64,000 nt of DNA from Lepidodermella squamata (GCA_047495785.1 JBLDXI010000033.1:1426001-1490000), one strand, 5' to 3'. Counted from the stretch's first letter, positions 19,601-55,121 are shown. Program-made: numbers and translations. The notes: generated from the sequence alone by a model not told the origin.

Positions 19601-22600
19601 ATGCATTCGATTGTCGTCTGCTTATTGCTGACGGCAACAGCAGACGTCGTATTTACGGAAGGTTTGTTAACATTTAATTCATTAATTTCATTCGGGTAGC
19701 TTTTCAATCGTTCACGCCTTCTAGGTATTAATTTTCGAGAATTTTCCTTCCTTGGTTTATAGGTTGGAGATAAATTTCTTTCACTAAATTTTGTGAACGG
19801 TTAGGAAGCGTTCGGTTTTCAGTTTTTTCGATAATTTTTTACTCATCGTTATGATCTACTATATAAGTCGCTTCAATAGCCATAGTGACGAAGCATAATA
19901 GGAAGCGAAGTGCCGCGCCGGCCGTGTCCGAATTCGACGGCTACTCGCTGGCGGCCGGCAACTGCCCCGGCGGCGAGATAGACCAGTTCGGCGTGCACTC
20001 GCGCGAGGCGTGCGCCGCGCGCTGTTCAATCATCGACGAGTGCCGCGCGTTCACGATTAGCAACGAGCGCATGACCGACGCGCAGTACCTGTGCCTCATC
20101 AAGTCGGCCGTTTGCCGCACGCCCGTGCCGTCGAACGGCTTCACGTTCCACTACAAGCTCGGCCCGTCCCCGCCCTTACCTGTTGAGCTAGAACCTGCTG
20201 ACTCATCACTGCGGCTCGTTGTCTCCCATGACGAGCCGGCGGCGCCCGTTCGAGCAACATCACTTACTAATAAAGCAGGTTATTAACGCTCACCTACCCT
20301 ACCATACCCTGACCCGTGTCGCTACTCGCTCTCCTCTTGTCTCTGCCTGTATTAACAGTTGTTGTGGGGTGTCCGCAGTCTTCTCTCTTCACACTGAAAT
20401 TTTCAACTCACAAACTCTGCTTTTAACATCAACCGCAAATCTGTTATTAATCGAGCTCATTTTTCGCAACATCAAAAAACGATAGGTTTAACGATATTCA
20501 CCTCGGACACCCCATGCTTGTTACCCAACCCAACGCTATAGGCTTCGACTAAATGTTTTTCACAGGTGATGTTGTGGGTCGTCGCGTCAATCGGCAGTCA
20601 GCCAATCAGCGAAATTTTCGATGTCGTCGGGGTGTCCTCTATAATTATTATATAAGATAAACGCTTAAACTTGTAATTTTTCTGATTTTTTTCCACAGAA
20701 AATTATTGCGTTATTTAAGAGGATTCTTTTGTATTTATTTTATAGTATACAATTACGGCGCCAACTATCCAGTGGGAGCAGCGTGGAGTCCTTGGGCGGG
20801 AGGTATGCCAAACGTACCCCCAGTTCCGAACGTGCCCAACGTACCGCCGGTCGGTAATTCTTGGAACTACGTCCCATCTTGGAGCTCGTGGACACCCAGC
20901 AGCTGGACGCCCCAGGCATGGAGCCCAGCCGCATGGGCGTACTGGGGCAACTGGGCGCCGAGCTGGTCGACCTGGGCGCCTCCGCCCGCGACCTGGGCAA
21001 CTTGGGCACCCACCGTCACATGGGCGCCCTGGTACCCGCCAGCGACGTGGGCCCCGTGGTACCCGCCCGCCACCACATGGGCGCCGCCGACCTGGACACC
21101 CTCTCCATGGAGCCCAGCCACCTGGGCTCCAACTTCTTGGTCGCCAGCTTCCTGGTCACCGTCACCCACCAGCAATTTCGGTACGAAAAACTTGAATTGA
21201 CCCAACTGACGTCACGTGACGTGTTTTCTTTTCGCTCTAGAATTTCCTGGATTTAAAAACACTGGTGGCCATTGCTATGGCAACAACTTATTCACAGCGC
21301 AGTACCCGACGCCGCAACAGTGCGCCGACGAGTGCGCGCGAAATGCCGCCTGCACTGGCTTTTCGATCGACGTCCACGAACTGACTGCGCCTTTCGATTG
21401 CGTCTTCAAAAACGGCGACTGCCCCTCGCCGCAGCCGGACGCGCGTTGGCGGTACTACCGGAAAGGTACGGTTATTCGTTTTCATCGGTTTTTTAGATGA
21501 TTGATGAAATGATTTAACAAAGTAACAGTTGTAACAGCCCCAGTAGTAGATTAATTTTTCTCGTGACTGTGACTATTTACTCTGTCTCTGTCTGACTGTT
21601 CTAATAACAGCTAACCCATCTGTCCCTACGTGGACCCCTACTTGGTCAACAACGCCTTGGACAACTTGGTACCCGAGTACGTCGTGGACAACGTGGTTCA
21701 CGCCCCCGCCGACGTGGACCACCTGGACTACTCCACAGCCGTGGACAACATGTAAACACGCGTTAACCCCAGCTCGCTTGCATTTTTATTAGATTTTTTT
21801 TTGAAAAAAAAACAACACATAGTAACGCGCAATTAAAAACGATGATTCATCATCATCGTGAGAGCTTGCAAAATTTTGCGATTTTTTTGTCTATCGTTTT
21901 TTTTCTAAAATTTGCATTGTTGTTGTTGTTGAAATTACCACCCCGGTCTCGGTAAACAGCAAGCTGGACGCCGTGCTCTCGCCCTCCCGCGTCCACGTCG
22001 ACTCCGTGGCGTTCGCCATGCTCGGCTGGTTCCTCGTGGGTTGCCCCACCGGTAGCGTGGACTGCGCCTCCGGCTACGTGGACTCCCCCTCCAGTAGCGT
22101 GGACCGCGCCTCCAGTTGCGTGGACTCCCCCACCAGTTGCGTGGACTGCGCCTCCAGTAGCATGGACTCCGCCTCCGGTTGCGTGGACAGCGCCACCGGT
22201 CGCCCCACAAGTCATCGTTCCACCAGTCACTTCTTGGATTCCCGCATCGAGTATTCACTGAACTTTGTTTAAACAACCCTTAAACAACGCGTTCCCCTCG
22301 CATACTAGTATAGATTAAATTAATCTAAAACCCCCTCGCGTTTTATTTATCGAGAATAAGCCCGTTTTACTCACGTTTCAACTGTTTGACTAACAGGATT
22401 GTTTTCGCTTTTTCATGCTTATAACTAAGACATGTTATAATGACCAAGTGAGTAATTTCAACTTTTTTAATTCGCTTCGATAACAGGTTACCAGCCTAAC
22501 TACCCTACCACCCCGTACCCGTTGCCTTCGTGGACCCCCAGCAGTTGGTACCCAACAGTGCCGGCGACAACGGGCGGTCTCGCGCAGTTCACCCGCTTGG

Positions 22601-23779
22601 CCGGCAATTGCGGCGGCAACTTCATCGGCGGAATTAGGTCACTCAGCCTCGACCAGTGTGCCCAGGAGTGCCTCAACACCCAGGGCTGCCAGGGCTTCTC
22701 ATTCTGCATGCAGACGACCTACCCGCAGTGCATCCTCAAGTCGGCTGGGTGCCAGTTCCCCGATCCGGCCGGCGTGTTCACCTTCTACCAACGCGGCGGT
22801 TATGGAAGCCCTGTCGGCGCGATCAATACCAACCCGCCTTCGAATCCTTGGTGGACAGCCGGGGTTAGGCCGTTTAAGAAATGTGAGTCATTTAATTTCA
22901 TTTTTTTCGGGTAATTTTTTCATTTTTTCCAGTGGCCCGTAACCGTTATTACGAACTTCCATTCCATTGCTCGGGCCCGATTCTTCAGGGCCCGGAGAAC
23001 TGGGACTTGGACACGTGTGCTGAGAAGTGTCTGAACGATTACAAGTGCACCGGTTTCTCATTCGACGTCACGCTCAAAGTTGAACCATTCGCGTGTATCC
23101 TAAGAACCGGCGTTTGCCAGGCCATGGCGATCAGCAGCCGATGGGCCTACTACGAACGGGCGGATGTTAAAGGCCCTAAACAAGTCACGTCACAGGTGCC
23201 AGGCGCCGACGACGGTAAAGAAGCTGTAGATCAAATCATTACCAAAACAACTGTCTCGGTTGAAACGAATGCTCAACAACACCAGTCTAGCAGCCATTCC
23301 GCTACGGATAGTCAAAACGAACGACAACCTCTTCCAACTCCTACCTCTCAAAAACCAGCGTTCACAATTTCGAAAAACATCGAGGAGAGAACAATCTACA
23401 ACATCGAAAACATCGACTGTGAGAAAAAATTTTAAGGACGATTTTTTGAATTACAGATTATTTTATAGTGACAAGCCGTTTCGAGCAGTTGAATGGTAAC
23501 TGCCCGGGCAACGTGCTGGGCGACGAGCAAGACCTGACGGTTGCCGAGTGCGCGAAAGCGTGCCTGCAAACGCCGGGCTGTGCCGGATTCACGTTCAACG
23601 TGCAGCGGCAGACGCGGCCATTCCAGTGCGTTATGAAGTCGCAAGGCTGTGCAGATCCGGCCGGCGTTAACGGCCAGTGGCGATTTTTCTCGCGGCGATC
23701 ATCACTGGTGCAACACGACGCCCTCGAAACCGAAGCGCCCGTAGTGTCAACGCACTCGACCCAGTCGAGGCGGAAATGA
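19601..23779 (+). CDS. Secreted protein A with five PAN/apple-like Cys domains and Trp/Pro/Thr-rich linkers; join(19601..19661,19886..20278,20746..21180,21241..21465,21611..21751,21960..22251,22487..22882,22933..23418,23469..23779)
   Basis: Signal-peptide exon MHSIVVCLLLTATADVVFTE; repeated 6-Cys module G(N/H)CxG..CAxxC.....CxGF(S/T)...CxLKxxxC; all eight introns are GT-AG and phase 1. Confidence 0.8.
22044..22204 (+). repeat. 21-bp coding tandem repeat encoding (A/P)PPVAWT, about 7-8 units
   Basis: CCNCCNGTNGCGTGGACN units recur inside exon 21960..22251 with synonymous variation. Confidence 0.85.
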
Positions 23780-49738: not shown

Positions 49739-51006
49739 ATGTCAGCTATCTCGTGCCTTGTCTTGGCAACCGTGGCCATCGGTGAGTGATCGACCCCCTA
49801 ATATAGCTATTCCGTAATGATTTTTCTGCTGCACAGGTGCCATGGCGCAGGATTTCAACGGCTACGTCCGTGTTCCCGGCAACTGCCCGGGCAGCAAGCT
49901 TGCTGAATACCCGAACCTGCCTTATGAAGAGTGCGCCAAGCTGTGCTCGGAAAACGAACAGTGCCTCGGCTTCACCATCCCCGTTTCTAAATCTGCAACT
50001 GGTCTCTGCATCCTCAAGTCGTCGGAATGCACCAAGCCAGAACCCAGCTCCGAATTCGCGTTCCACAGCAAGAAGCAGGCTCTGTTCGGCGCCGCCTTCG
50101 TCGATGACGTCGTGCCATGGTACCCGCCTGCTCCGTACCCAGTCCCAGGCCCGGCTGCCTATGCTGGCTACTACTACGGTGGCATTGCTGGCTTCACCCG
50201 CGCCAACGGCAACTGCCAAGGAAACTTCCTCAGCGGTGTCCTTGCCCTGCCCATCGACCAGTGCGCTGCTCAATGCCTCGCGACTGCTGGCTGTGCCGGT
50301 TTCTCGTTCAACTTCCACGCTGCCTATCCTCAGTGCATCCTGAAGGCCGCGTCTTGCGCCTACCCTGATCCTGGTGCCGTCTTCACCTACTTCGCTCGCG
50401 CTGCTCCGGCTCCCCCAGTCTACCCGGCTCCGGCTCCGGCTCCTTACTACCCTCCCTACTACCCGGACGTCTACGTCCCTGACTACCCTGCCTACCCGAT
50501 CTACACTCCATGGGTTAAGTGTAAGTGAAAAATTTCTGGTCTTAGAGAATTCCAGCTTAAAATGATTTCTTGATTTAACAGCTGCTCGCAAGTTTTTCAC
50601 CTACTCGAACGAGCTGTGCTCAGGCGCCATCAAGAAGTCCGTTGACCTCGACATTGAGAAGTGCGCCGATGCGTGCCTCGCCGATCACGAGTGCCACGGA
50701 TTCTCGTTCGACAACCACGCTGCCTCAGCTCCGTTCACCTGCATCCTGCGCGCTGAGCCGTGCCAGAAGCGCGAGAACAGCACCCGGTGGTCGTACTTCG
50801 AGCGCCAGTCTGGTGAAAAGTTCGACCTCGACGTCAAGTACCTGGAGGAACTCGAAGCCGGCAGGCAGCAGAAGCTGGCCGCTGAGCAGGCCGCCGCCAA
50901 CCAGAAGCCAACCTCCTTCTTCGACCTGCAGCGGTTCTTCGGCCAGCGCGCCAACGGCCAGGCCCACCACCAGGCTGGTCCCCAGGACGAAATCAAGCGT
51001 CTGTAA
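49739..51006 (+). CDS. Secreted protein B with three PAN/apple-like domains and Pro/Tyr-rich linkers; join(49739..49781,49837..50520,50582..51006)
   Basis: Signal MSAISCLVLATVAIGAMA; GNCPG, GNCQG and LCSG modules homologous to gene A; phase-1 introns. Confidence 0.85.
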
Positions 51007-52750: not shown

Positions 52751-55121
52751 ATGAATTTCCAGATCGCTTGCCTACTTTTAGGCATCGAAGTCGCCTTTGC
52801 CGAAGGTTATCTCTTAACTCAAATCGATTTTATTATCATTTCTTAATTGTTGTCATGTGATTAGTTTTCAATTACGGCGCTGGAACGGGAGGTTCGGCGC
52901 CAGCTGCCCCTGTCATCCCGGCAGCTCAACCCGCGGCCGGCTCATGGTCGCCTCTTAATGATCTCAATAGTTTGTTCACTACCCAGCTACCAGGTATGGG
53001 TGGCATGGGCCCTGGCAGCAGCTGGACCTACAACCCATCTGCCTGGACCGGCGGCGACCCCTTCGGAACCAACCAAGCGTGGATGCCGACGACCCCGGCG
53101 TGGAACCCGACCGCTCCGCTCACCTGGGCCCCGGTGACTAACCAAGCTACCGGCGACTCTGTTTCGCAATTCACGCGTTACAACGGCAACTGCCAGGGCA
53201 ATTACCTCGGCGCTGTCACCCAGCTGACCCTGGACGCGTGCGCCGCCTCGTGCCTCGGCACCCCGGCGTGCGCTGGCTTCTCGTTCAACCTCCGCTCGAC
53301 TTACCCGCAGTGCATTCTCAAGAACTCGGTCTGCTCGTCGCCCGACCCGGCTGCTCCATTCACGTTTTTCGCCCGCAACGGCTACCAGCCAGCCGCTCCG
53401 GCCTACTACCCTGGTTATCCGACCTACCCAACTTACGTCCCGATCGGCCCGCCAATTGCCATCCAGCCCGCCTACCCGCCAGCTATCCCGCCGCCGCAAT
53501 ACCCGCCAGCGATCCCGCCGCAATATTCTGGTTATCCGTACAACCCATCGGTTTACCCCTACCCATGGGGCCGCCCGTCGCCTTATTGGAAATCGGCCAA
53601 CGTTCGCCAATTCAAGCGATGTGAGTTCATAGGAATATAGCTGAAAAATTAATATTGCCTTATTAATCAACTAATTTTCAAAGGTTCTAACAAAAGATTC
53701 GCCTGATTTAGACGAATATATTGATGAATAGAAAGTAGTAAATTTAGCGATTTTCACTGGGATAATTCATTTTAGCAAATTTTAGGCGGAAGCAGATTAT
53801 TCAAAATTTCAATGATCAAATAATTTTACCAGGAAAAAAAATTAAGTTGTTGCAAATTGGCTGTTTGGTATTCTCACGACTCTCAGTTTTCGCTACCGTA
53901 AAATTGGATCCACCTTTTACCGGAACCAAATTTACGGTGAGCGGAACCAAATTTTGAAATTTTCTATTGGCCTGAAATCACTTTTCCTTCTTACGGGTCA
54001 AGATTAATCATAATAATTAAAAAAAAATCATCAATAAATTCAGCGTAAAATTCTCTATAAGACCGAGTGTTCGATTCAAAACCAATGCGCGCCTAAAATT
54101 CGCGAATTAAAAAAATGACTCTTGGCATATTTCGACGTTGGTTCCTCAAAATGCATCGTATTTGGTTCCGCTAAAGCAAATTATATTTCTCTCATCGTAA
54201 ATTTCTCTCCGCTAGCATAAAATTCCAGTATTTGGTACATTTTAAGATCATTTATATCTAAAATTTATATAGAAATTTTAGCTAGATACAGGGAGAAGAA
54301 ATAACCAGTTTTGGGACATTTATCCCATTTTTCTGGGTCATTTCTCTATTTTTCTGAATTTTCTGTAATTTTTCCAATTTTTTTCGATTTTTCTCGCCTA
54401 GCTGGAGCTCCGTTCTATGAAATGCCGGCCAACTGCTCTGGGCCGATCATGCGCGGTCCATACGGCGCTCATGTTGAAAAGTGCGCCGAAGACTGCAGCG
54501 CCCTGAAGGACTGCACCGGTTTCTCGTACGACAACGCCGCCGAGGCGTGCGTTCTTCACACCGGCGTTTGCCAGAGCATGTCGCGCAGCACGCAGTGGAC
54601 GTACTTCGCGCGCGGCGATCGCATGCCGAACGCCGAAACTGAAGCCGCCACTCGTGCCATTGAAACCGAGCCGGTGGCGCCACTCAAGCCGCAGCAGCAC
54701 CAGCCGCAGCCGCAGCAGCAGCAGCAGCAACGCCAGCAGAATACCGAATACGTCTCGTACAATCTTAGCCCCATGGACAGTAAGTCCACCCCCCTTGCGT
54801 AAACACACTTGACGCCATTATCCGCAATGTGACATTTTTACAGTGCTCAACCGCTTCGAGCAAGTCAATGGCAACTGCCCGGGCAACGCGCTCGGCGATA
54901 CGATGAACATCGGCCTCGATGAATGCGCCCGTCTTTGCCTCGAGAACACCGCCTGCTTCGGCTTCTCGTTCAACATGCGCGTCAACCGCCCAGAGGAATT
55001 CCAGTGCATGCTGAAGCGCAGCGGCTGCTACCGCCCGAGCGAGTCCTCGCCTTACCGCTTCTTCAGGCGGCGCATGTTGAACCAACAACAACAGCAGCAG
55101 GCGGGTCGTCTTCGCGCGTAG
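52751..55121 (+). CDS. Secreted protein C with three PAN/apple-like domains and W/P/Y/Q-rich linkers; join(52751..52805,52865..53620,54402..54779,54844..55121)
   Basis: Signal MNFQIACLLLGIEVAFA; domains are colinear with domains 3-5 of gene A; phase-1 introns. Confidence 0.85.

What the first reader, a model, noticed from the sequence alone, without database searches (positions are those of the whole stretch)
19601..23779. Modular secreted PAN/apple protein built entirely from phase-1 exons with Trp-periodic low-complexity cassettes
Seen: nine exons and eight phase-1 introns. Five compact 6-Cys modules alternate with exons of extreme Trp/Pro/Thr/Ser content (WTPSSWTPQAWSP, TWAPWYPP, TTWYP, (A/P)PPVAWT repeats). 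Three linker exons (20746-21180, 21611-21751, 21960-22251) carry no domain and could be skipped in frame. Inference: Trp spaced every 4-7 residues in a Pro-rich chain suggests a sticker-spacer, self-assembling extracellular material (cuticle, shell, glue or egg coat) with tunable isoforms. WxxW sites could also be C-mannosylated. I do not recognise this architecture as a named family.
Basis: partly seen in the sequence, partly recalled or inferred. Interest (0 to 1): 0.75.

Follow-up and report, generated by a model that had tools for sequence, protein, structure and literature searches.

The report
Tryptophan-rich secreted PAN-domain protein
A tiny freshwater animal (probably a gastrotrich) has a gene for a secreted protein that strings five ordinary PAN/apple binding modules on uncharged spacers where every third to seventh residue is tryptophan, a very rare sequence type; its role, probably a sugar-coated matrix or glue component, is untested.

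Summary
A nine-exon, all GT-AG, all phase-1 model (19601-23779, +) gives one 912-codon frame. Exon GC is 0.60 and intron GC 0.36.

Five exons carry true PAN/apple modules: Pfam PAN_4/PAN_1 hits, six cysteines invariant in 49 genomic modules, an AlphaFold model at pLDDT 91, and Z 10.4 to the plasminogen PAp domain.

Three exons (286 aa) are 15% Trp, 25% Pro and 27% Thr+Ser, with 2 charged residues. Trp is never closer than i+3. Repeat copies differ almost only at synonymous sites, so the frame is selected.

These cassettes have no paralog in the 121-Mb genome and no hit in two protein word searches. Neighbouring paralogs use Tyr/Pro linkers instead.

All 12 WxxW/C sequons lie in the cassettes. 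The genome encodes two DPY19 C-mannosyltransferases, and the copy I checked has the WxxW-type pocket residue.

A relative's transcript fragment confirms the exon 8/9 junction. The exon 2/3 join is unverified, and a two-gene reading remains open.

Verdict: an ordinary PAN mosaic protein with an unusual, apparently undescribed Trp-periodic linker, most likely a glycosylated matrix or adhesive spacer. The sticker-spacer and isoform ideas are untested. The scan had already noted the paralogs and many other PAN genes in this genome.

The parts
19601..19661 (+). Exon 1: start codon and a 20-residue hydrophobic N-terminus (putative signal peptide), with a phase-1 donor
   Evidence: An in-frame stop lies two codons upstream of the ATG. 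Kyte-Doolittle 9-residue mean reaches 3.1. Donor is G|gtttgt. Paralogs A and B have analogous signal-peptide exons.
19886..20278 (+). Exon 2: PAN module 1 (19933-20166) plus a charged, Pro-rich tail
   Evidence: PAN_4 22.9 bits and PAN_1 21.0 bits, both just under the curated cut-offs. Six family-invariant Cys. An environmental ortholog, P0095, is 56% identical.
20746..21180 (+). Exon 3: Trp cassette 1 (144 aa; 24 W, 33 P, no charged residue; unit roughly (S/T)-W-x-P)
   Evidence: Composition. W spacing 3-7 apart from one gap of 23, with 0/5000 shuffles keeping minimum spacing >=3. 15 of 24 W follow S/T and 17 of 24 have P at +2 (0/2000 shuffles each). Eight WxxW sequons. No Pfam hit. No paralog. 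No word-search hit.
21241..21465 (+). Exon 4: PAN module 2
   Evidence: Sub-threshold hits to PAN_2, PAN_1 and PAN_4. Six invariant Cys in the family alignment. Hit by a profile built from this gene's own five modules, so that hit is by construction.
21611..21751 (+). Exon 5: Trp cassette 2 (46 aa; 9 W, 18 T, 10 P, no charged residue)
   Evidence: three WTTW sequons, spacing 3-7.
21960..22250 (+). Exon 6: Trp cassette 3 (96 aa). Seven 21-nt heptad repeats (A/P)PPVAWT lie at 22043-22189, and two extra Cys lie near its start
   Evidence: TRF finds period 21, 6.7 copies, 78% matches. 63 of 87 inter-copy differences are at codon position 3, with 52 synonymous against 24 non-synonymous codon differences. 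No word-search hit.
22487..22882 (+). Exon 7: short Tyr/Trp/Pro lead-in, PAN module 3 (22579-22803, with one extra Cys), and a Gly/Pro/Trp tail
   Evidence: PAN_4 33.4 bits, above the cut-off of 27. Ortholog P0001 is 63% identical by phmmer and 52% by BLAST over the whole exon, and also has a W/S/T-rich lead-in.
22933..23418 (+). Exon 8: PAN module 4 (22938-23168) plus an 83-residue charged, Ser/Thr/Gln-rich spacer
   Evidence: PAN_1 20.1 bits. P0107 is 79% identical over the module. P0016 covers the spacer.
23469..23779 (+). Exon 9: PAN module 5 (23471-23704), tail and TGA stop
   Evidence: PAN_4 29.8 bits and PAN_1 25.8 bits, both above their cut-offs. AF2 model pLDDT 91. Z 10.4 to plasminogen PAp. 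The spliced relative fragment P0016 is 85% identical and reads straight across the predicted exon 8/9 junction.
20569..20596 (+). Candidate mini-exon inside intron 2 (ATG plus 9 hydrophobic residues, weak phase-1 donor gtcagc). It belongs only to the rival two-gene model
   Evidence: A TAA stop lies two codons past the exon 2 donor (20284-20286).
49739..51006 (+). Paralog A: a three-exon, three-PAN secreted protein with Tyr/Pro-rich linkers
   Evidence: The 378-aa transcript-derived protein P0002 from a relative (Logan contig, 1213 nt; about 80% identity) maps to exons 49739-49781, 49837-50520 and 50582-51006. Both introns are phase 1.
52751..55118 (+). Paralog B: a signal-peptide exon, then an exon whose start is homologous to the start of exon 3 but only mildly Trp-rich, then three PAN modules with Tyr/Pro linkers

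Best explanation
This is one lineage-specific member of a large, tandemly expanding family of secreted PAN/apple mosaic proteins. The host is a small invertebrate, and the assembly statistics fit the gastrotrich Lepidodermella squamata.

Shown: five disulfide-locked PAN modules of the ordinary apple fold. Between and before them lie three exon-sized, uncharged, non-globular spacers made almost only of Pro, Thr, Ser, Ala and regularly spaced Trp.

Inferred mechanism: the protein enters the ER by its N-terminal signal. The unfolded spacers are good substrates for two modifications. The first is mucin-type O-glycosylation, because S/T sits directly before most Trp with Pro three residues on. The second is DPY19 C-mannosylation of the first Trp of the 11 WxxW sequons.

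Once secreted, the PAN modules would act as the carbohydrate- or protein-binding nodes. The stiff, extended, glycan-coated spacers would set the distance between nodes. Their exposed indole rings would add many weak cohesive or surface contacts.

The most likely setting is an apical extracellular coat or secretion (cuticle or scales, egg shell, or adhesive-tube glue). Which one is unknown.
For: Gene model and coding evidence. PAN identity.

Family expansion: at least 59 module matches in the genome and 81 in the window plus 200 kb of sampled loci.

Spacer properties: 80% of the 286 residues are P/T/W/A/S and only 2 are charged, against 109 of 598 elsewhere in the protein. AF2 gives pLDDT 45 with no secondary structure. 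The (S/T)-W-x-P unit is far beyond chance.

C-mannosylation: all 12 WxxW/C sequons are in the spacers and all have S, A, G or T at +1. DPY-19 prefers small +1 residues and acts only on unfolded chains (PMC10154233). The genome has two DPY19 genes, and one has the Leu474-equivalent that defines WxxW specificity.

Precedents: mussel Pvfp-1 combines Thr O-glycosylation with Trp C-mannosylation in an adhesive (PMC4275877). C. elegans LET-653 uses PAN domains as matrix anchors next to a PTS region whose length varies between splice isoforms (PMC4970718).

Constraint on the linkers: the lead-in of exon 7 keeps its W/S/T character in a relative that is 52-63% identical. Paralogs carry aromatic/Pro linkers with Tyr in place of Trp.
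Against: There is no expression, localisation or glycosylation data for this gene.

Only one of the eight junctions is supported by a transcript, and that transcript comes from a relative.

The cassettes have no paralog. They may therefore be a young, fast-drifting repeat expansion with little specific function.

The O-glycosylation preference for Pro at +3 is recalled knowledge, not tested here.

Apicomplexan DPY19 enzymes did not modify a short WxxW peptide without the following Cys (PMC8433626), so sequon use varies between enzymes.

Single-sequence AF2 on low-complexity sequence is weak evidence for disorder.
Confidence: 0.5

Rival explanations
1. The Trp residues are unmodified hydrophobic stickers on Pro-rich spacers. 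They drive coacervation or self-assembly into an insoluble extracellular material, and exon skipping tunes the sticker number.
For: Evenly dispersed Trp with no WW or WxW. Almost no charge. No predicted fold. Paralogs have Tyr/Pro-rich linkers of the same style. Secreted low-complexity proteins with phase-separating capacity dominate the C. elegans pharyngeal cuticle (PMC9629831). All cassettes are in-frame skippable.
Against: An uncharged chain with 15-20% Trp would probably aggregate in the secretory pathway unless glycosylated. The sequons and the enzyme for modification are present. No isoform data exist. W-rich low-complexity domains are rare in nature (PMC11132505), so there is no worked precedent.
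Confidence: 0.2
2. There are two genes rather than one. Exons 1-2 would make a small secreted single-PAN protein ending at the TAA just past the exon 2 donor. A mini-exon at 20569-20596 would supply a short signal peptide to a second protein made of exons 3-9.
For: The stop lies two codons after the exon 2 donor. Intron 2 is the longest at 467 nt. It contains an ATG followed by nine hydrophobic residues with a phase-1 GT. In paralog B the signal-peptide exon splices directly onto the exon homologous to exon 3. Earlier notes report many small secreted PAN proteins in this genome.
Against: The mini-exon donor gtcagc is weak and the peptide is very short. DNA alignment to paralog B's signal-peptide exon shows no homology. 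Stops within 2-12 codons follow every donor of this gene, so a nearby stop is not unusual (read). Orthologs of exons 2, 7 and 8 each list an environmental contig of the same length, 21,528 nt, probably one contig. I saw no canonical poly(A) signal after exon 2.
Confidence: 0.2
3. The cassettes are polysaccharide-binding strips. In a polyproline-II-like chain, Trp at i and i+3 face the same side about 9 Å apart. That is close to the sugar repeat of chitin or cellulose, so they could stack on glycan chains as the aromatic faces of carbohydrate-binding modules do.
For: Spacing 3 is the commonest Trp-Trp distance, at 11 of 42 intervals. Pro content is 25%. PAN/apple modules of MIC4 and SML-2, which match the fold, are lectins.
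Against: This is a purely geometric inference from recalled helix parameters. Spacings of 5 and 7 are nearly as common. No fold or homology supports it. If the Trp are C-mannosylated, the stacking face would be blocked.
Confidence: 0.07
4. It is a fast-evolving recognition or immune lectin. The PAN family expansion reflects an arms race, and the Trp cassettes are neutral repeat expansions in spacers that need only be long and flexible.
For: Large, tandem, diverging PAN family. Linker chemistry differs between neighbouring paralogs. The cassettes are unique to this gene.
Against: Repeat copies differ mainly at synonymous sites. The (S/T)-W-x-P unit and the ban on close Trp pairs are strongly non-random. 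The costly residue Trp is unlikely to accumulate to 15% neutrally.
Confidence: 0.1
5. The Trp-rich open frames are not coding. They would be GC-rich repeats that happen to be open, and the gene model would be an artefact.
For: There is no direct transcript evidence for exons 3-6. Low-complexity GC-rich DNA is open in several frames, and minus-strand ORFs overlap it.
Against: All splice sites are canonical and all are in one phase. There is a sharp exon/intron GC contrast, and variation concentrates at third positions only in this frame; the other two frames give stops or mostly non-synonymous change.
Confidence: 0.03

Closest known systems
PAN/apple module superfamily (Pfam PAN_4/PAN_1: plasminogen PAp, HGF N domain, Toxoplasma MIC4 apple domains, Sarcocystis SML-2)
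   Same: Profile hits. Six conserved Cys. A sheet-plus-helix fold matching plasminogen PAp at Z 10.4 with rmsd 1.9 Å over 72 of 78 residues; HGF N domain about Z 10, MIC4 Z 8.7, SML-2 Z 8.5. As in MIC4, several modules occur in one secreted protein.
   Different: Sequence identity to solved members is only 14-22%. None of the top 107 related proteins I fetched has a Trp-rich linker; the highest count is 4 W in any 30 residues.
C. elegans LET-653 (PAN domains + PTS/mucin-like region + ZP domain, apical matrix)
   Same: Secreted, with PAN modules next to a Pro/Thr/Ser-rich region whose length differs between splice isoforms. The PAN domains act as matrix anchors (PMC4970718).
   Different: I saw no ZP domain or furin site here. 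The PTS regions here carry 11-20% Trp and no charge. There are five PAN modules rather than two.
Perna viridis foot protein Pvfp-1 (mussel adhesive)
   Same: A secreted repetitive Pro/Thr/Trp-containing protein in which Thr is O-glycosylated and Trp is C-mannosylated and hydroxylated. It has been proposed that modified Trp stands in for DOPA (PMC4275877; listed as a C-mannosylated protein in PMC8433626).
   Different: No homology was tested, because I held no reference sequence. From memory, Pvfp-1 repeats are Lys-rich decapeptides, whereas these cassettes are uncharged. Pvfp-1 has no PAN modules.
Thrombospondin type-1 repeats and other WxxW C-mannosylation substrates
   Same: WxxW sequons with small +1 residues in a secretory protein. 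DPY19 enzymes are present in the genome.
   Different: TSRs are folded, Cys-knotted, Arg-stacked domains with WxxWxxWxxC. Here the sequons sit in Cys-free, Arg-free low-complexity chains. No TSR profile matched.
Diatom cingulins (Trp-type and Tyr-type aromatic-rich regions in an insoluble matrix)
   Same: An extracellular matrix protein family in which aromatic-rich regions come in Trp and Tyr flavours. This parallels the Trp cassettes here and the Tyr/Pro linkers of paralogs A and B. Cingulins form an insoluble organic matrix (PMC4220933). The W/Y subdivision is from memory.
   Different: Unrelated organisms and no homology. Cingulins alternate with Lys-rich silica-forming regions, whereas these cassettes have no Lys.

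Membership tests
PAN/apple domain (Pfam clan PAN; PAN_4 PF14295, PAN_1 PF00024) | Profile match at or above the curated cut-off | tested here: met
   Modules 3 and 5 exceed the PAN_4 cut-off (33.4 and 29.8 bits against 27). Module 5 also exceeds PAN_1 (25.8 against 21.4). Modules 1, 2 and 4 fall just below (17-23 bits) but align to the same profiles.
PAN/apple domain | Conserved cysteine framework (six Cys in apple-type modules) | tested here: met
   C11, C27, C31, C37, C53 and C60 are invariant in 49 modules from this genome, and G39 and F40 are nearly invariant.
PAN/apple domain | Antiparallel sheet packed on one helix (apple fold) | tested here: met
   AF2 model pLDDT 91.2 with strand, helix and three further strands. 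Foldseek's top hits are all PAN/apple. VIA-align gives Z 10.4 to plasminogen PAp and 9.4-10.1 to HGF N domain entries.
PAN/apple domain | Disulfide connectivity C1-C6, C2-C5, C3-C4 | not testable with these tools
   Model coordinates are not returned, so connectivity can only be inferred from the shared fold.
DPY19 C-mannosylation substrates | W-x-x-W/C sequon in an unfolded secretory chain, with a small residue at +1 | tested here: met
   There are 11 WxxW and 1 WxxC, all in exons 3, 5 and 6, with S, A, G or T at +1. No fold is predicted. Sequon rules are from PMC10154233.
DPY19 C-mannosylation substrates | A WxxW-type C-mannosyltransferase in the same organism | tested here: met
   Two Dpy19 loci score 520 and 490 bits. 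The C19 copy aligns to C. elegans DPY-19 (7zlg) and keeps the Glu71, Leu474, Pro576, Tyr578 and Glu579 equivalents.
DPY19 C-mannosylation substrates | Mannose actually attached to Trp | not testable with these tools
   This needs mass spectrometry of the native or recombinant protein.
Mucin-like PTS domain | Long Pro/Thr/Ser-rich, non-globular stretch in a secreted protein | tested here: met
   P+T+S make up 51.7% of 286 residues, and no structure is predicted. Atypical for a mucin: 15% Trp. O-glycosylation itself was not testable.
Class 1-1 (phase-1 flanked) shuffled extracellular modules | Every module exon is flanked by phase-1 introns | tested here: met
   8 of 8 introns are phase 1. The same holds for both introns of paralog A, fixed by a relative's spliced protein. 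The rule itself is established knowledge (Patthy's exon-shuffling work), cited from memory.
Pvfp-1-type Trp-bearing adhesive proteins | Sequence or repeat homology to Pvfp-1 | not tested
   No Pvfp-1 sequence was available by reference. The resemblance is compositional and functional only.

The most novel reading that the evidence does not exclude
The cassettes are a new kind of extracellular low-complexity domain. They would be an intrinsically disordered, uncharged chain in which densely spaced Trp residues, largely C-mannosylated by DPY19, and neighbouring O-glycosylated Thr/Ser form a cohesive glyco-aromatic material used in gastrotrich glue, cuticle scales or egg shell. That would be the first poly-C-mannosylated domain outside folded TSR or cytokine-receptor modules. 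It would also be a natural Trp-based counterpart of Tyr/DOPA-based adhesives.
Probability: 0.2. Interest if true: 0.75.

Novelty: new variant of a known kind. Interest (0 to 1): 0.5.

Why it matters
Trp is the rarest and most costly amino acid. A survey of low-complexity domains across reference proteomes found W-rich ones rare in all four domains of life, including viruses, and suggested that selection limits them (PMC11132505). That survey used stricter composition cut-offs than these cassettes would meet.

Here a secreted animal protein holds 44 Trp in 286 otherwise uncharged residues. The spacing rule is strict and the peptide sequence is under selection. If the Trp are C-mannosylated, the protein would widen the known substrate range of DPY19 enzymes from folded repeats to disordered chains.

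If the cassettes act as cohesive stickers, they offer a natural Trp-based design for wet adhesives or matrix materials. They would also give a first molecular handle on gastrotrich cuticle or adhesive biology, for which I found no molecular study in the literature searched.

If they are only drifting spacers, the gene is an ordinary member of an expanded PAN family.

Tried and rejected
1. A whole-genome DNA pattern for periodic TGG. It was swamped by collagen genes, where TGG occurs out of frame, and the reversed control gave as many hits. Uninformative.

2. HMMER searches of the genome with exons 3 and 6. They returned only self hits plus two weak Pro-rich hits on contig C2.

3. A composition scan of 200 kb from 20 other PAN-cluster stretches. 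No further Trp/Pro cassette turned up, only out-of-frame noise.

4. Word searches of 5.8 billion proteins with exon 3 and exon 6. Nothing scored at E <= 0.01. The length filter (0.55-1.75x) and HMMER's composition correction limit what this blank means.

5. ESM Atlas with exon 3. Recognition was low and only bacterial hypothetical clusters appeared. No lead.

6. The look-up of encoding contigs for P0001 and P0002.

7. A JGI metagenome scan with exon 7. It gave only a distant 32% PAN hit.

8. Alignment of intron 2 to paralog B's signal-peptide exon. No homology, so it neither supports nor excludes the mini-exon.

9. A tyrosinase (PF00264) search of the genome, to test quinone tanning of the Tyr-rich paralogs. 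There was no hit, but the control genomes were silent too, so absence is not shown.

10. The Pvfp-1 paper itself (PMC2749108) is not held.

11. Exons were searched one by one, by reference. Scripts joined exons only to check frame and stops and to choose the paralog A splice sites that best fit P0002.


Full report
**What is there**

The stretch 19601-23779 (+) reads as a nine-exon gene. The exons are 19601-19661, 19886-20278, 20746-21180, 21241-21465, 21611-21751, 21960-22250, 22487-22882, 22933-23418 and 23469-23779. Every intron is GT-AG and phase 1. Introns are 50-467 nt long. The joined frame has 912 codons with only the terminal stop.

Exons are 60% GC and introns 36%. An in-frame stop sits two codons before the ATG. 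The first 20 residues are strongly hydrophobic.

Exons were used one by one, by reference. Scripts joined exons only to check frame and to place paralog A's splice sites.

**The modules**

Exons 2, 4, 7, 8 and 9 each hit the PAN profiles. Modules 3 and 5 exceed the curated PAN_4 cut-off and module 5 also exceeds PAN_1. Modules 1, 2 and 4 fall just under.

I aligned 49 modules taken by reference from the window and from 19 other stretches of the same genome. Six cysteines are invariant, and a Gly-Phe pair is nearly so.

With that alignment AlphaFold2 models module 5 at pLDDT 91.2, as a sheet packed on one helix. Foldseek's list is PAN/apple from top to bottom. VIA-align gives Z 10.4 (rmsd 1.9 Å, 72 of 78 residues) to the plasminogen PAp domain, 9.4-10.1 to HGF N domain entries, 8.7 to Toxoplasma MIC4 and 8.5 to the lectin SML-2. 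Membership in PAN/apple is therefore met on profile, cysteine framework and fold. Disulfide pairing could not be checked.

**The cassettes**

Exons 3, 5 and 6 (144, 46 and 96 aa) hit no Pfam family. Together they are 24.8% Pro, 15.7% Thr, 15.4% Trp, 12.9% Ala and 11.2% Ser. Only 2 of 286 residues are charged, against 109 of 598 in the rest of the protein.

- Trp-Trp distances are 3 (11 times), 4 (2), 5 (10), 6 (5) and 7 (10), plus four longer gaps, and are never 1 or 2. No shuffle out of 5000 keeps so large a minimum spacing in exon 3 or exon 6; for exon 5, 48 of 5000 do.
- In exon 3, 15 of 24 Trp follow Ser/Thr and 17 of 24 have Pro at +2. Each scores 0 of 2000 shuffles, so the unit is about (S/T)-W-x-P.
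- Exon 6 holds seven 21-nt repeats encoding (A/P)PPVAWT.

The frame is under selection. Between the heptad copies, 63 of 87 nucleotide differences lie at codon position 3. The other two frames give stops or mostly non-synonymous change. The two 9-residue copies in exon 3 differ at five codons, all synonymous.

A single-sequence AlphaFold run on exon 3 gives pLDDT 45 and no secondary structure. That fits a non-globular chain but is weak evidence.

**Context in the genome**

The assembly has 121.2 Mb in 151 contigs, and the window is about 43% GC. The published Lepidodermella squamata assembly has 122 Mbp, 157 contigs and 43% GC (PMC11660948). I did not prove the identity.

PAN modules are very common here. 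There are at least 59 matches to module 5 and 81 profile hits in the window plus 200 kb of sampled loci. Earlier notes list many other PAN mosaics.

Two paralogs lie in the window.
- Paralog A (49739-51006) has three PAN modules and Tyr/Pro-rich linkers.
- Paralog B (52751-55118) has a signal-peptide exon spliced to an exon whose start is homologous to the start of exon 3. That exon has only about 7 Trp. Tyr/Pro linkers and three PAN modules follow.

So aromatic/Pro linkers are a family trait, and the extreme Trp version is specific to this gene. Genome searches with exons 3 and 6 found only themselves. A composition scan of 200 kb of other PAN clusters found none.

**Relatives elsewhere**

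A full HMMER scan of 1.84 billion representatives with exon 7 gave 101 hits.

- P0001 is an open-frame call on an ENA metagenome contig. It is 63% identical by phmmer (52% by BLAST over the whole exon) and keeps a W/S/T-rich lead-in.
- P0095 (56% identical to exon 2) and P0108/P0107 (79% identical to PAN module 4) each list a contig of the same length, 21,528 nt. The gene order is therefore probably conserved in an environmental relative.
- P0016 is 207 aa, from a 1288-nt JGI contig, and is mislabelled as a pseudopilin. It runs from the exon 8 spacer straight into exon 9 with exactly the predicted junction residue, and is 85% identical in exon 9. This is transcript-type evidence for removal of intron 8 in a relative.
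- P0002 is 378 aa, from a 1213-nt Logan contig. It is the spliced ortholog of paralog A and fixes two phase-1 introns there.

No relative of the cassettes was found in word searches with exons 3 and 6 or in the ESM Atlas. None of the 107 fetched PAN proteins has more than 4 Trp in any 30 residues. These blanks are limited by length filters and by composition correction.

**How it probably works**

What is shown: a secretory-type N-terminus, five apple-fold modules, and three uncharged, unstructured Trp/Pro/Thr/Ser/Ala spacers whose peptide sequence is conserved between repeat copies.

What is inferred: the spacers are modified in the ER and Golgi.

- All 12 WxxW/C sequons of the protein lie in the spacers, each with S, A, G or T at +1.
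- DPY-19 mannosylates the first Trp of WxxW, prefers small +1 residues, and accepts only unfolded chains (PMC10154233; PMC8433626).
- The genome has two Dpy19 genes. The C19 copy keeps the catalytic Glu71 and the Pro576/Tyr578/Glu579 equivalents. It also keeps the Leu474 equivalent that the structure paper names as the determinant of WxxW rather than WxxC preference.
- The (S/T)-W-x-P unit puts Pro three residues after most Ser/Thr. From recalled knowledge, this favours mucin-type O-glycosylation.
- The whole protein has no N-glycosylation sequon.

A chain modified in this way would be an extended, hydrated brush studded with indole rings, with PAN modules as binding nodes. There are two close functional precedents. 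Mussel Pvfp-1 is an adhesive that carries both O-glycosylated Thr and C-mannosylated, hydroxylated Trp (PMC4275877). C. elegans LET-653 has PAN domains that anchor it in a luminal matrix and a PTS region that varies between splice isoforms (PMC4970718).

The setting is a guess among cuticle or scales, egg shell, or adhesive-tube secretion.

**Rivals**

1. This is plausible in kind (PMC9629831) but untested. Such a chain would be hard to secrete without modification.
2. Two genes rather than one. A stop lies two codons past the exon 2 donor. Intron 2 is the longest and holds an ATG plus nine hydrophobic residues with a weak phase-1 donor. Paralog B splices its signal exon directly to the exon 3 homolog. 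Against this, the donor is poor, there is no homology to paralog B's signal exon, and every donor in this gene is followed closely by a stop. I put this at about 0.2. It would not change the cassette finding.
3. Glycan-binding aromatic strips, a geometric idea only.
4. Drifting spacers in an arms-race lectin. The selection signals argue against this.
5. Non-coding repeats. Splice logic, GC contrast and third-position variation argue against this.

**Novelty and score**

The phase-1 modular build is standard for animal extracellular mosaics, and PAN proteins are abundant in this genome. Those parts are ordinary.

The unusual part is the Trp-periodic, charge-free cassette. A survey across reference proteomes found W-rich low-complexity domains rare in all four domains of life, including viruses (PMC11132505). 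That survey's composition cut-off is stricter than these cassettes would meet. I found no description and no relative of the cassettes.

I class the finding as a new variant of a known kind: a PAN mosaic protein with a mucin-like linker. Interest is 0.5. The sequence is real and odd, and it gives a testable link to C-mannosylation and bioadhesion. There are no functional data, and only one junction has transcript support, in a relative.

Noticed in passing
window 49739-51006: Paralog A is a three-exon, three-PAN secreted protein with Tyr/Pro-rich linkers. A relative's 378-aa transcript-derived protein (P0002, about 80% identical) fixes its exons at 49739-49781, 49837-50520 and 50582-51006, with two phase-1 introns of 55 and 61 nt.
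   Followed up: yes
window 52751-55118: Paralog B has a signal-peptide exon (52751-52805) spliced directly to an exon whose start is homologous to the start of target exon 3. That exon carries only about 7 Trp, and its later linkers are Tyr/Pro-rich. This suggests the Trp cassettes grew from a milder ancestor.
   Followed up: partly
P0016 (JGI/IMG contig of 1288 nt): A spliced fragment of this animal gene's ortholog sits in a public metagenome or metatranscriptome set. It is labelled 'type II secretory pathway pseudopilin PulG', which is a mis-annotation of a eukaryotic transcript with a Gln-rich stretch.
   Followed up: partly
L025:66-965 (G000 C33:2,218,066-2,218,965, minus strand) and P0003: An 822-aa environmental protein (P0003) combines PAN modules, Tyr/Pro linkers of the EEPYYPP type and a Kunitz domain. 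It looks like the ortholog of a 796-aa open frame in this genome's second PAN cluster on C33.
   Followed up: no
window 19601-23779 (whole protein): None of the eight exon translations I scanned (885 of the 912 codons) contains an N-x-S/T sequon. That is unusual for a secreted protein of this size.
   Followed up: no
L018:1501-3555 (G000 C19:958845-960899) and L017 (G000 C9:5013125-5015200): The genome has two DPY19 C-mannosyltransferase genes. The C19 copy is one uninterrupted open frame of about 700 aa and keeps the WxxW-type pocket leucine. I did not examine the C9 copy residue by residue.
   Followed up: partly
window 20597-20660 (intron 2): A CCAAT motif and a TATA-like run lie 85-150 nt upstream of exon 3, just after the candidate mini-exon. 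This is probably chance in AT-rich intron sequence, but it bears on the two-gene rival.
   Followed up: no
G000 whole genome: No tyrosinase (PF00264) match was found. The Tyr-rich linkers of the paralogs may therefore not be cross-linked by that enzyme. The control genomes were also silent, so absence is not shown.
   Followed up: partly
G000 C1:348,000-364,600 (minus strand): A long collagen-type Gly-X-Y gene dominated the TGG-period pattern search.
   Followed up: no
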